Of a DNA stretch of 64,000 nucleotides, positions 2,049 to 63,632 are shown piece after piece. Under the pieces are notes generated by a model. That model worked only from the letters and a program-made list of their open reading frames with translations, ran no database searches and was not told the origin of the DNA. Both the position numbers and the translations under genes were made by a program. The stretch comes from Schmidtea polychroa. Lineage: Eukaryota. The stretch spans positions 38,130,001 through 38,194,000 of the forward strand of contig CM097885.1 in the NCBI GenBank assembly GCA_044892525.1, written 5' to 3'. Within the stretch, counting starts at the first letter, position 1. The number at the start of each line of letters is the position of its first letter.

Positions 2049-2568
2049 ATTTACAAATAACCGTGGTTTTGACAAACACGACATTTATTCAAACAAATCA
2101 ATCCGTTCAAATAATGTATCCAACGACCTCCGTTAAAGATGTTAAGCAGTTGGTACAGAACTCTGCATATTGTATACAACCGATGAAAATGATTTGCAAA
2201 GGAATTATGGTTATTTTATTTTCTGTTCTTTAACTTGTTACCGTTGGTGTAGTTTTCCTCTATTTTCTCATGGACCGATGGCACTTATACAAATCGGTAC
2301 AATTTCGGATCAAACAGTGTCACCGACTTTTGTCCTTGTGGATTAACAAACGGCTGTGCTGGAATTCTTGGAGAGTCAAAATCTTCGATGATGTCTCGTC
2401 AATGTAGTTGTGATACTCCGTCTTCCGATGTCACATTTTCAGATTTTGTACTGATAACCAATAAAACCGTTTTGCCCATTAAGTCATTTATTCTAAAATT
2501 ACCATCAAACGCCGACCCAGTCAACTCTCTGGTCATAGGATCTCTGATGTGTTCTAGTTCAAAATTCG
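2049..2568 (+). CDS. Exons 2049-2209 and 2253-2568: Caspr/neurexin-IV-type fibrinogen-like module
   Basis: Spliced translation ...[29 protein letters not shown]...WTDG...CPCGLTNGC...CSCD...[15 protein letters not shown]...IGSLMC. This follows the Caspr pattern C.Q...C / CACG...C / CNCD / D.G.L..K..LPV / GPL.C. The intron is 43 bp, phase 0. Confidence 0.8.

Positions 2569-63632: not shown

What the first reader, a model, noticed from the sequence alone, without database searches (positions are those of the whole stretch)
2049..63632. Giant hybrid matrix protein: Caspr-FBG + VWD/C8/TIL + about 57 EGF + follistatin
Seen: one phase-compatible exon chain of over 3,000 aa joins a Caspr-type module, a single mucin/VWF-type D assembly, a fibrillin-length cbEGF rod without any 8-Cys TB domain, and follistatin/Kazal repeats. 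Known: these modules usually sit in separate families (Caspr/neurexin IV, VWF/mucins/zonadhesin, fibrillin/LTBP, agrin/SPARC). Inference: this could be an uncharacterised filament-forming, adhesive or mucus protein. I do not recognise the architecture, but I cannot confirm that it is undescribed.
Basis: partly seen in the sequence, partly recalled or inferred. Interest (0 to 1): 0.75.

Follow-up and report, generated by a model that had tools for sequence, protein, structure and literature searches.

The report
Giant conserved secreted matrix-protein gene
The window holds the back half of one intact flatworm gene of at least 110 kb for a secreted protein of about 6,000 residues; the same protein exists, unnamed and unstudied, in molluscs, ribbon worms, annelids and acorn worms, and probably forms long cross-linked threads in mucus, glue or tissue matrix.

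Summary
On the + strand, 57 exons (2049-63632, about 3,060-3,085 aa) translate without a stop. Every intron not touching an N gap is GT..AG.

- a Caspr-type fibrinogen-like (FBG-like) module
- 3 cbEGF
- VWD-C8-TIL-TILa
- an EGF rod (57 EGF hits in all)
- Kazal-like units

No TB domain was found.

The window holds only part of the gene. Upstream lie six more FBG-like modules, three C-type lectin domains, a second VWD-C8-TIL set and a WxxW domain. Downstream lie a Kazal half, TSP1, a further Kazal-like unit and a cystine knot.

The chain from 2049 to the cystine knot aligns end to end with one 6,028-aa Macrostomum-clade transcript: 41% identity, 423 of 429 cysteines matched, no gap over 7 residues. 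So it is one gene, and no exon is hidden in an assembly gap.

Collinear homologues exist in a nemertean, an annelid and molluscs; a partial hemichordate protein shares the seven-module array. All are labelled "uncharacterized". Pfam does not see the seven-module array.

Function is inferred, not shown: a secreted, disulfide-linked, calcium-stiffened filament with a multivalent binding head. Limpet pedal-mucus proteins and flatworm glue protein ap1 are the nearest studied relatives.

No RNA reads could be laid.

The parts
2049..2209 (+). Exon: middle of the 7th Caspr-type FBG-like module. Its first exon lies about 2.7 kb upstream, outside the window, at about L004 9188-9330.
   Evidence: The own-genome scan with the module profile A2 hits 2057-2203 (E 3.6e-4, profile positions 44-96). 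The acceptor lies at 2047-2048 and the donor follows 2209.
2253..2568 (+). Exon: C-terminal half of the 7th FBG-like module (CxC...CxCD...LP...C signature).
   Evidence: Profile A2 hit at 2265-2567, E 2.4e-11. blastp matches module 7 of the homologues. No Pfam hit. The fold of the homologous module matches the CNTNAP2/Nrx-IV FBG region.
2616..5675 (+). Three calcium-binding EGF exons (2616-2762, 5370-5489, 5547-5675) linking the FBG-like array to the D assembly. Gaps 4066-4264 and 4398-4539 lie in the intron between the first two.
   Evidence: Phase 1-1 exons. They match contiguous residues of P0171 (2861-2909, 2911-2948, 2951-2992).
7223..14505 (+). VWD domain in three exons (7223-7446, 7842-7967, 14335-14505). 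The acceptor of the first lies in gap 7029-7222. Gap 10253-10418 is intronic.
   Evidence: Pfam VWD E 8.7e-7 and 3.6e-11. Donor and acceptor inspected. Collinear with P0171 2999-3167.
14551..14951 (+). C8 domain, two exons (14551-14721, 14765-14951).
   Evidence: Pfam C8 E 1.5e-7. Matches P0171 3173-3280.
16576..16785 (+). TIL domain exon. Its 5' edge abuts gap 16293-16575.
   Evidence: Pfam TIL E 7.8e-13. Matches P0171 3282-3351.
17503..17680 (+). TILa (E-module) plus first EGF of the rod.
   Evidence: Pfam TILa E 7.6e-6 and EGF_3 E 9.1e-7.
17736..62302 (+). EGF/cbEGF rod: 44 exons, about 52 EGF modules. Exons:
- 17736-17987, 18496-18630, 20832-21065, 21630-21743
- 28473-28593, 28644-28766, 28820-28945, 29007-29264, 29318-29425, 29473-29709
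- 33621-33737, 37275-37406, 37455-37580, 37989-38108
- 43330-43458, 43507-43608, 43665-43784
- 47548-47682, 48199-48435, 49190-49330, 49376-49504, 49550-49678, 49725-49850
- 51713-51838, 51886-52085, 52137-52323, 52371-52496, 52542-52685, 52737-52845 (runs into gap 52846-52988), 52989-53122, 53178-53300, 53356-53481, 53554-53709
- 55166-55291, 55337-55450, 55493-55789, 55880-56005, 56057-56179, 56224-56406, 56462-56683
- 61544-61807, 61854-62120, 62180-62302
   Evidence: Cys-rich open frames on + only. Exon chain by dynamic programming, refined by hand. EGF HMM: 57 hits in the model from 2049 to 68561. One-to-one alignment with the rod of P0171/P0168.
63261..63479 (+). FOLN/Kazal-like unit 1.
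   Evidence: Pfam Kazal_2 E 0.014, below cut-off. blastp to P0171 5665-5734, E 2e-11.
63528..63632 (+). Front (FOLN-like) half of unit 2. Its Kazal half is at L005 1126-1245, outside the window. After it come TSP1 (L005 1290-1454), a further Kazal-like unit (L005 4088-4300) and the cystine knot (L005 4350-4561 plus a last small exon).
   Evidence: Kazal_2 E 2.1e-6 for L005:1128-1244. TSP_1 E 2.4e-11. The cystine-knot profile A3 hits sclerostin at 8e-6 and the VWF CTCK 4nt5 at 4.9e-5. The last small exon was read.

Best explanation
SHOWN.
The window carries exons for the C-terminal ~55% of a single, intact, single-copy gene. The gene spans at least 110 kb, from about G000:C1:38,089,050 to 38,198,700, and encodes a protein of about 6,000 aa.

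It belongs to an unnamed family; collinear homologues are found in flatworms, a nemertean, an annelid and molluscs, and a partial hemichordate protein shares the FBG-like array.

Domain order. The N-terminal steps up to the lectin are known from the Macrostomum-clade transcript; planarian exons match from the WxxW domain onward.
1. Signal peptide
2. C-type lectin domain
3. WxxW domain
4. cbEGF
5. D assembly (VWD-C8-TIL-TILa)
6. EGFs
7. Three C-type lectin domains
8. EGFs
9. Seven tandem Caspr-type FBG-like domains (procollagen C-propeptide fold)
10. Three cbEGF
11. Second D assembly
12. About 52 EGF, two thirds of them calcium-binding
13. Two FOLN/Kazal-like units
14. TSP1
15. A further Kazal-like unit
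16. C-terminal cystine knot

There is no membrane span.

INFERRED (mechanism).
- The protein is secreted.
- The cystine knot joins two chains tail to tail, as in VWF and gel-forming mucins.
- The D assemblies add head-side links or ordered packing.
- The cbEGF run forms a calcium-stiffened rod on the order of 150 nm, as in fibrillin.
- The lectin-like and FBG-like head gives many binding sites for glycans, matrix or surfaces.
- The product would be a long, cross-linked, cohesive filament network.
- My best guess for where it acts is secreted mucus or adhesive material of gland cells. Sub-epidermal matrix is the main alternative.
For: One gene, intact.
- 57 window exons have no stops, and every intron away from a gap is GT..AG.
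- The model from 2049 to 68561 aligns end to end with residues 2701-6028 of P0171, a 6,028-aa ORF on one 18.5-kb Logan contig. Identity is 41.2% over 3,227 columns, 423 of 429 Cys are matched, and the longest indel is 7 residues.
- The upstream exons are collinear with P0171 169-2637.
- The mollusc homologue P0002 is an uninterrupted 7.8-kb ORF on 8.3-8.4-kb contigs from two runs.
- FBG-like hits in this genome fall only at this locus and at one other place.

Domains.

Secretion. Homologues start with signal peptides and no protein has a membrane-span-like stretch.

Conservation. Homologues occur in Lineus, Owenia, Liolophura, Mercenaria, Pecten, Dreissena, Lottia, Babylonia, Macrostomum and Saccoglossus.

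Transcription hint. Four runs from two studies hold 0.34-0.38 of the sampled words of 51600-57000. Exon-only 31-mers would give 0.40-0.42, whereas DNA runs hold 0.89-0.96.

Functional leads.
- Limpet pedal-mucus proteins P-vulgata_2 (2,500 aa; vWFD, EGF x11, Kazal x2, TSP1) and P-vulgata_1 (vWFD x2, C-type lectin, EGF, Kazal x3, cystine knot; expressed in pedal-sole glands) are described in PMC7333891.
- The P-vulgata_2 probe primers translate to the two signature motifs of the FBG-like module.
- Flatworm glue protein ap1 has the same order as the N-terminal part (PMC6410801, PMC9229212).
Against: - There is no direct RNA or protein evidence from this animal.
- The first exons (signal peptide, first lectin domain) were not located within 50 kb upstream.
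- Every mechanistic step is by analogy.
- Only two D assemblies are present, against three or four at the N-terminus of VWF and mucins.
- There is no PTS mucin region.
- The lectin domains lack canonical EPN/WND motifs (read from the sequence).
- The cystine-knot dimer prediction gave no answer.
- The link to P-vulgata_2 rests on domain inventory, length and two primers, not on an alignment.
- Tissue of expression is unknown.
Confidence: 0.6

Rival explanations
1. Same gene and protein, but it is a tissue-matrix component. It would be a microfibril-like or basement-membrane fibre made by muscle or parenchyma, and it may stand in for fibrillin. It would not be a gland secretion.
For: - The 52-EGF rod is of fibrillin length, with 37 calcium-binding starts.
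- A six-frame scan found no TB domain anywhere in this genome.
- Planarian muscle is the main source of matrisome proteins, some with domain orders not found in humans (PMC6453901).
- TSP1 and FOLN/Kazal modules are typical of matrix proteins such as agrin and SPARC (general knowledge).
Against: - The control genomes of the TB scan are all bacterial, and a 44-residue domain split by introns is easily missed, so the absence of fibrillin is weakly supported.
- Molluscs have true fibrillins with TB domains and also have this family.
- The nearest studied relatives come from secreted mucus and glue.
Confidence: 0.25
2. It is the planarian orthologue of flatworm adhesion protein 1 (ap1), the cohesive part of the duo-gland temporary glue, made only in adhesive gland cells.
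For: ap1 has the order signal peptide - C-type lectin - EGF - VWD - C8 - TIL - VWC - 17-19 EGF (PMC9229212 and PMC6410801). That is the order of the N-terminal part seen in P0171 and in the planarian upstream exons. The limpet paper reports BLAST similarity between P-vulgata_2 and Minona ap1.
Against: - As described, ap1 has no FBG-like array, Kazal, TSP1 or cystine knot, and it is 1,687 aa (Tmed).
- In Mlig-ap1 the domain core is flanked by lysine/arginine-rich regions. The model here has K 5.4% and R 2.4%.
- Macrostomum has both Mlig-ap1 and separate homologues of this gene (P0168, P0017, P0296), so the two are at best paralogues.
- The family also occurs in animals without duo-gland organs.
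- I could not obtain ap1 sequences to test the relation.
Confidence: 0.08
3. The chain is an artefact of joining exons of two or more neighbouring genes, or it is a decaying pseudogene.
For: - A phase-compatible chain of phase 1-1 EGF exons can be drawn across gene borders by construction.
- There are long, transposon-filled introns of up to 6.7 kb.
- The Macrostomum genome annotation splits its copy into two models, g1 and g2.
- There are no laid RNA reads.
Against: - The chain aligns end to end, with indels of 7 residues or fewer, to single assembled transcripts of relatives.
- There are no stops in about 9.2 kb of coding sequence, and 423 of 429 cysteines are kept.
- The exon preceding the counterpart of the mollusc N-terminus is only 66 nt away and phase-compatible.
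Confidence: 0.05
4. It is a cell-surface adhesion receptor of the Caspr/Neurexin-IV kind.
For: The FBG-like modules are closest in fold and sequence to those of CNTNAP1-5, Neurexin-IV, axotactin and nlr-1 (25-37% identity, TM 0.84-0.88).
Against: - Pfam finds no discoidin or laminin-G domains in the homologues.
- There is no membrane-span-like stretch.
- The C-terminus is a cystine knot.
- A separate locus at C1:125,733,799-125,734,295 carries the only other FBG-like hits and is the likelier Caspr counterpart.
Confidence: 0.02

Closest known systems
Uncharacterised homologues: Macrostomum lignano PAA83517.1 / A0A267GDJ0 (4,265 aa, N-terminally cut), a 6,028-aa Macrostomum-clade transcript (P0171), Lineus longissimus XP_064643492.1 (5,886 aa), an Owenia fusiformis protein (5,696 aa) and a Liolophura sinensis protein (5,476 aa)
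   Same: They have the same domain order from the lectin/EGF head through seven FBG-like modules, three cbEGF, VWD-C8-TIL-TILa, a long EGF rod, Kazal-like units, TSP1, a further Kazal-like unit and a cystine knot. With the flatworm proteins the match is residue for residue: 41% identity and the same number of EGF modules.
   Different: None has been studied; their names are 'uncharacterized' or an automatic 'Fibrillin-2'. The extra N-terminal WxxW + D assembly was seen only in the flatworm members; in Lineus it was not found.
Short mollusc members: Lottia gigantea V4AG22 (2,658 aa), Mercenaria XP_053408175.1, Pecten XP_033732371.1, Dreissena XP_052258852.1, and the transcript protein P0002 (2,604 aa)
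   Same: EGFs, seven FBG-like modules, three cbEGF, one D assembly, Kazal-like units, TSP1 and a cystine knot, all in the same order.
   Different: The rod has only about 4 EGF instead of about 52. No C-type lectin block or N-terminal D assembly matched the planarian exons.
Limpet pedal-mucus proteins P-vulgata_2 and P-vulgata_1 (Patella vulgata, PMC7333891)
   Same: - P-vulgata_2: 2,500 aa with vWFD, EGF x11, Kazal x2 and TSP1. That is the inventory Pfam-type tools would give for the short mollusc members. Its probe primers translate to the Y-E-C and C-N-C motifs of the FBG-like module. It was found by proteomics in all three mucus types.
- P-vulgata_1: vWFD x2, C-type lectin, EGF, Kazal x3 and a cystine knot, expressed in pedal-sole glands.
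   Different: Orthology was not tested by alignment, because I could not pass the published sequence to a tool. The paper does not mention the FBG-like array. In situ hybridisation for P-vulgata_2 is not among the five reported.
Flatworm adhesion protein 1 (Mlig-ap1, Mile-ap1, Tmed-ap1), the cohesive glue protein
   Same: Signal peptide, C-type lectin, EGF, VWD-C8-TIL-VWC/TILa and a run of cbEGF. This is the order of the N-terminal part of this family in flatworms. It is cysteine-rich and secreted.
   Different: As described, ap1 has no FBG-like array, Kazal, TSP1 or cystine knot. It has 17-19 EGF and, in Macrostomum, huge lysine/arginine-rich flanks. Macrostomum has both proteins.
Caspr / CNTNAP1-5 / Drosophila Neurexin-IV / axotactin / C. 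elegans nlr-1
   Same: The FBG-like domain itself matches: TM 0.84-0.88, rmsd about 2 A, 25-37% identity over about 200 residues.
   Different: Those proteins are membrane receptors with one FBG-like domain set among discoidin and laminin-G domains. Here seven copies stand in tandem in a secreted protein without those domains.
Fibrillins / LTBPs
   Same: A long run of calcium-binding EGF modules of similar length. Automatic annotation calls relatives 'fibrillin-2'.
   Different: No TB (8-Cys) or hybrid domains. It has D assemblies and a cystine knot, which fibrillins lack.
VWF, gel-forming mucins, SCO-spondin, FCGBP, zonadhesin, alpha-tectorin
   Same: VWD-C8-TIL-TILa assemblies; a WxxW (CysD-type) domain; and a C-terminal cystine knot that matches the VWF CTCK by profile. 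These are the top non-family hits of the D-assembly region.
   Different: No PTS mucin region, no VWA or LDLa modules, only two widely separated D assemblies, and a very different middle part.

Membership tests
Unnamed '7 x FBG-like + D assembly + cystine knot' family (Lineus XP_064643492.1, Lottia V4AG22, Macrostomum A0A267GDJ0 and others) | Seven tandem FBG-like modules of about 195-205 aa. | tested here: met
   The module HMM finds 7 in Lineus, bivalves and gastropods. In the planarian, seven sets of module exons lie between window coordinates -15837 and 2568.
Unnamed '7 x FBG-like + D assembly + cystine knot' family | Collinear order after the array: 3 cbEGF, VWD-C8-TIL-TILa, EGF run, Kazal-like units, TSP1, a further Kazal-like unit, cystine knot. 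| tested here: met
   Exon-by-exon blastp is collinear with 8 homologues. Global alignment to P0171 gives 41.2% identity and 423 of 429 Cys matched.
Fibrillin / LTBP | TB (8-Cys) domains interspersed among cbEGF. | tested here: not met
   PF00683 has no match in the six-frame own-genome scan, though the control genomes gave no signal either. It is also not among the Pfam hits of P0002, P0008 or P0168.
Fibrillin / LTBP | Long array of calcium-binding EGF modules. | tested here: met
   57 EGF HMM hits; 37 calcium-binding start motifs; 39 hydroxylation-type motifs.
Caspr / Neurexin-IV | Caspr-type FBG-like domain. | tested here: met
   An AF2 model of the homologous module (pLDDT 96.7) matches the CNTNAP2 596-792 region at TM 0.86-0.87. 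The planarian module itself could not be folded, because it is split over three exons.
Caspr / Neurexin-IV | Discoidin and laminin-G domains, a membrane span and a cytoplasmic tail. | tested here: not met
   Neither domain is among the Pfam hits of the homologues. There is no hydrophobic span beyond the signal peptide. The protein ends in a cystine knot.
VWF / gel-forming mucins | VWD-C8-TIL(-TILa) D assemblies. | tested here: met
   One is in the window. A second is upstream at L012 3155 to L002 2566.
VWF / gel-forming mucins | C-terminal cystine knot (CTCK). | tested here: met
   The profile of 10 family C-termini hits sclerostin at 8e-6, the VWF CTCK (4nt5, 9qrv) at 3.5-4.9e-5 over the whole domain, and norrin at 2.6e-4. 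The single-sequence Pfam match is sub-threshold.
VWF / gel-forming mucins | Central PTS (mucin) region, or VWA domains. | tested here: not met
   The model has S 8.0%, T 5.5% and P 3.7%, and it aligns throughout to EGF modules. VWA is not among the Pfam hits.
VWF / gel-forming mucins | Covalent multimerisation through the cystine knot and the D assemblies. | not testable with these tools
   The homodimer prediction gave no answer. It needs biochemistry.
Flatworm adhesion protein 1 (ap1) | Order: signal peptide, C-type lectin, EGF, VWD-C8-TIL-VWC, 17-19 cbEGF. | tested here: inconclusive
   The N-terminal part of P0171 and the planarian upstream exons show the same order. No ap1 sequence could be retrieved for an alignment or a tree, because the last protein search was swamped by EGF proteins.
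Flatworm adhesion protein 1 (ap1) | Expression in adhesive gland cells, and loss of adhesion on RNAi. | not testable with these tools
   No expression data could be tied to this gene.
Follistatin / agrin-type FOLN-Kazal modules | Kazal-type domain following a FOLN (EGF-like) half. | tested here: met
   Kazal_2 scores 28.2 bits (cut-off 22.8) for L005:1128-1244, which completes the unit begun at 63528-63632. Unit 1 (63263-63478) scores only 16 bits.

The most novel reading that the evidence does not exclude
This is an ancient, unnamed family of secreted polymer-forming proteins, present in Spiralia and hemichordates. Its defining part, a seven-fold array of the fibrinogen-like domain otherwise known only as a single copy in Caspr/Neurexin-IV receptors, is invisible to standard domain libraries. 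It may be a main cohesive fibre of invertebrate locomotory mucus and temporary glues, from which the flatworm glue protein ap1 was derived by truncation.
Probability: 0.3. Interest if true: 0.75.

Novelty: new variant of a known kind. Interest (0 to 1): 0.6.

Why it matters
- It defines a conserved giant extracellular protein family that genome annotations carry only as 'uncharacterized'. More than half of the short members is an array that standard domain libraries do not see.
- It gives the Caspr-type fibrinogen-like domain a second, secreted and multivalent context. That may help explain what the domain binds.
- A rod of about 52 EGF modules is kept module for module between two distant flatworm lineages. 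Its length therefore seems to be under selection, which can be tested.
- If the link to limpet mucus and flatworm glue holds, the gene is a ready RNAi target in planarians for how wet, reversible adhesion and mucus cohesion work.

Tried and rejected
- Pfam on the FBG-like pieces gave nothing, or only sub-threshold Fibrinogen_C/COLFI matches to the first 40 residues.
- The PDB sequence search found only weak fibrinogen beta matches.
- The ESM Atlas gave no usable hit.
- A protein search with the window's FBG-like exon found no fragment.
- A protein search with the N-terminal part of P0171, meant to retrieve ap1 proteins, was swamped by EGF proteins.
- The cystine-knot homodimer prediction gave no answer, neither for nor against.
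- Searches of papers for homologue accessions, for tandem Caspr-type domains, and of the sea-star footprint paper found nothing.
- A tblastn search for the signal-peptide and first lectin exons within 50 kb upstream found nothing.
- The first exon chain contained low-scoring filler exons in long introns, including pieces of transposons and Asn-run microsatellites. I dropped them where no homologue matched.
- Readings considered and rejected: fibrillin (no TB), Caspr receptor (no laminin-G or membrane span), gel-forming mucin (no PTS region), pseudogene (no stops, cysteines kept).
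Full report
WHAT IS IN THE WINDOW

The window is AT-rich (27.7% GC) and carries 21 runs of N. Cysteine-rich open frames with EGF signatures lie almost only on the + strand, from about 2.5 kb to 63.6 kb.

Pfam confirms the following:
- VWD at 7225-7464 and 14332-14514
- C8 at 14765-14959
- TIL at 16576-16818
- TILa + EGF at 17503-17688

Calcium-binding EGF exons start with the last base of an AG acceptor doubling as the G of a GAT codon. That is the classic phase 1-1 arrangement.

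I built an exon chain by dynamic programming on codon log-odds and splice scores. I kept exons that match a homologue, plus five clear EGF/Kazal exons, and corrected seven boundaries by eye.

The result in the window is 57 exons from 2049 to 63632:
- 9,191-9,257 coding nt, about 3,060-3,085 aa, with no stop.
- 52 of 56 introns are GT..AG. The other four abut N gaps.
- 33 introns are 42-72 nt long.
- An HMM built from the window's own single-EGF exons finds 57 EGF modules in the model from 2049 to 68561.
- 37 have a calcium-binding start motif.

Its start coordinate, 2049, is exactly an exon start.

THE GENE RUNS OFF BOTH ENDS

The window is G000:C1:38,130,001-38,194,000. I fetched 80 kb upstream and 30 kb downstream.

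Downstream, in order:
- the Kazal half that completes the unit begun at 63528-63632 (Kazal_2, E 2e-6)
- a TSP1 repeat (E 2e-11)
- a further Kazal-like unit (matches the homologues' Kazal by blastp; no Pfam hit of its own)
- a cystine knot, completed by a last small exon carrying the final CxC

A profile of ten family C-termini hits sclerostin (8e-6), the VWF CTCK structures (3.5-4.9e-5, whole domain) and norrin. A hAT transposase and Ty3/gypsy elements follow.

Upstream, reading 5' to 3':
- a WxxW domain (E 3e-10)
- a cbEGF
- a second VWD-C8-TIL-TILa set
- four EGFs
- three C-type lectin domains
- four EGFs

The window's 2049-2209 and 2253-2568 are the last two of the three exons of the seventh module.

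ONE GENE, AND NOT UNIQUE

A phmmer search of 1.84 billion representatives with one module exon found proteins with seven matching stretches:
- Lineus longissimus XP_064643492.1 (5,886 aa)
- about 2,600-aa proteins of Mercenaria, Pecten, Dreissena and Lottia
- a 2,604-aa transcript protein (P0002)
- Macrostomum lignano proteins

A second search added a 6,028-aa protein on a single 18.5-kb assembled contig of a Macrostomum relative (P0171), and proteins of Owenia (5,696 aa) and a chiton (5,476 aa).

Exon-by-exon blastp is collinear with all of them. The module HMM finds exactly seven modules in each complete member.

The decisive test is the global alignment:
- The planarian model from 2049 to the cystine knot (3,323 positions) aligns end to end with P0171 residues 2701-6028.
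- Identity is 41.2% over 3,227 columns.
- 423 of 429 cysteines are matched.
- Fewer than 100 residues are unaligned on either side.
- No indel is longer than 7 residues in the homologue.

The rod therefore has the same number of EGF modules in two distant flatworm orders.

Further support:
- P0002 is an uninterrupted 7.8-kb ORF with UTRs on contigs from two independent runs, so it is a transcript.
- The upstream planarian exons are collinear with P0171 residues 169-2637. P0171 begins with a signal peptide, a C-type lectin, WxxW, cbEGF and a D assembly.
- Only 66 nt, phase-compatible, separate the exon matching the mollusc N-terminus from the cbEGF exon before it.

I conclude that the whole stretch, at least 110 kb, is one gene of about 6,000 codons. 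Its first exons were not found. It is single-copy: the only other FBG-like hits in the genome are at C1:125.73 Mb, probably the Caspr counterpart.

THE ASSEMBLY GAPS

I did not fill or look up any N stretch. The alignment to the homologue shows that nothing larger than a few codons is missing.
- Gaps 4066-4264, 4398-4539, 10253-10418 and 15605-15828 lie between exons that match contiguous homologue residues. They are intronic.
- The other in-window gaps that do not touch an exon also sit in introns.
- Gaps 7029-7222, 16293-16575 and 28340-28472 hide an acceptor and at most about 6 codons.
- Gap 52846-52988 hides the end of one EGF and a mini-intron.
- The frame across those four cannot be read directly.

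WHAT THE 'CASPR-TYPE' MODULE IS

Pfam sees nothing in about 1,400 residues of the mollusc proteins. Only the first 40 residues of a module give weak fibrinogen/COLFI matches.

The planarian modules are split by introns and cannot be referenced as one piece. I therefore folded module 2 of P0002 with a 45-sequence alignment of modules. The model has pLDDT 96.7 and pTM 0.90.
- Against Swiss-Prot models, the best matches are the FBG regions of CNTNAP2, Caspr, CNTNAP3-5, Drosophila Neurexin-IV and axotactin, C. elegans nlr-1 and a coral skeletal protein. They score TM 0.81-0.88, 25-37% identity, over the whole module.
- Among solved structures, the best matches are procollagen C-propeptides (TM about 0.6). 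True fibrinogen domains match only partly.

What is new is seven copies in tandem in a secreted protein.

HOW IT PROBABLY WORKS

These points are inferred, not shown.
- Homologues have signal peptides, and no member has a membrane-span-like stretch.
- By analogy with VWF and gel-forming mucins, the cystine knot would make tail-to-tail dimers, and the D assemblies would add further links.
- By analogy with fibrillin, the calcium-binding EGF run would be a stiff rod on the order of 150 nm.
- The lectin-like and FBG-like head offers many binding sites.
- Together this suggests a cross-linked filament network.

Points against a simple mucin or VWF model:
- there are only two D assemblies;
- there is no PTS region;
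- the lectin domains lack canonical sugar-binding motifs;
- a homodimer prediction for the knot gave no answer.

WHERE IT MIGHT ACT

No paper in the library names these accessions. Two bodies of work come close.
- Flatworm glue protein ap1 has the order signal peptide, C-type lectin, EGF, VWD-C8-TIL-VWC and 17-19 EGF (PMC6410801, PMC9229212). That is the order of the N-terminal part here. But Macrostomum has both proteins, so they are at best paralogues.
- The limpet pedal-mucus proteome lists P-vulgata_2: 2,500 aa, with vWFD, EGF x11, Kazal x2 and TSP1, found in all mucus types.
- It also lists P-vulgata_1: vWFD x2, C-type lectin, EGF, Kazal x3 and a cystine knot, expressed in pedal-sole glands (PMC7333891).
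- The P-vulgata_2 inventory and length fit the short mollusc members. Its probe primers translate to the Y-E-C and C-N-C motifs of the module.

This is a lead, not a demonstrated orthology.

The alternative is a tissue-matrix fibre. A six-frame scan found no TB domain in this genome, but that scan is weak.

EVIDENCE OF EXPRESSION IN THIS ANIMAL

It is indirect only.
- Four runs from two studies hold 0.34-0.38 of the sampled words of 51600-57000.
- DNA-like runs hold 0.89-0.96.
- 31-mers lying wholly inside my exons make up 0.40-0.42 of that stretch. The four runs therefore look like spliced RNA of this gene.

VERDICT

- The gene is a real, intact member of a conserved but unnamed and unstudied family: a new variant among VWD/EGF/cystine-knot secreted glycoproteins.
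- Function is untested.

Noticed in passing
window 30760-32886 (- strand); also 50075-50332 (+ strand): A Penelope-like retroelement sits in an intron of the gene. It has a reverse transcriptase ORF (RVT_1, E 1e-9) followed by a GIY-YIG endonuclease-like ORF (E 0.007). A second GIY-YIG-like fragment lies in another intron on the + strand.
   Followed up: partly
window 41735-42400 (+ strand), and L006 5865-6430 (- strand): Related ORFs with no Pfam family occur in an intron of the gene and again about 40 kb downstream. They are probably copies of one repeat family.
   Followed up: no
L005 8599-9999 and L006 2-520 (- strand), about 8 kb past the gene's stop: Long open hAT-type transposase frames of 467 and 173 aa (hAT dimerisation domain, E 4e-9). 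They may come from a recently active element.
   Followed up: partly
L011 8085-8291 (+ strand), just upstream of the WxxW exons: A 69-aa actin fragment (Pfam Actin, E 1e-9) stands alone among transposon remains. It is likely a processed pseudogene piece.
   Followed up: partly
L007 6364-9998, L008 4251-8697, L011 3455-6615 (+ strand): Near-identical Ty3/gypsy-type elements with long open gag-pol frames flank the gene on both sides.
   Followed up: no
G000:C1:125733799-125734295 (+ strand): This is the only other place in the genome that matches the FBG-like module profile (E 1e-7 and 7e-7). It is probably the planarian Caspr/Neurexin-IV counterpart.
   Followed up: no
whole genome: The six-frame scan found no TB (8-Cys) domain, which may mean that this planarian lacks a true fibrillin or LTBP. 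The scan is weak for a 44-residue domain, and the control genomes gave no signal.
   Followed up: no
window 7700-7860, 17170-17310, 49036-49140; L002 about 5860-6340; L003 about 5250-5830: Long TAT/ATA and AAT microsatellites in introns read as poly-Tyr/Ile/Leu or poly-Asn frames. The automatic exon chain briefly took them for exons.
   Followed up: yes
L002 6732-7094 (+ strand): A 121-aa open frame of normal composition with no Pfam hit and no homologue match lies in the intron between the EGF block and the first of the three lectin domains.
   Followed up: partly
Acanthaster planci XP_022108975.1 (P0027, 3,748 aa): This sea-star protein combines three FBG-like modules with three D assemblies. 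It is a different arrangement of the same parts.
   Followed up: partly
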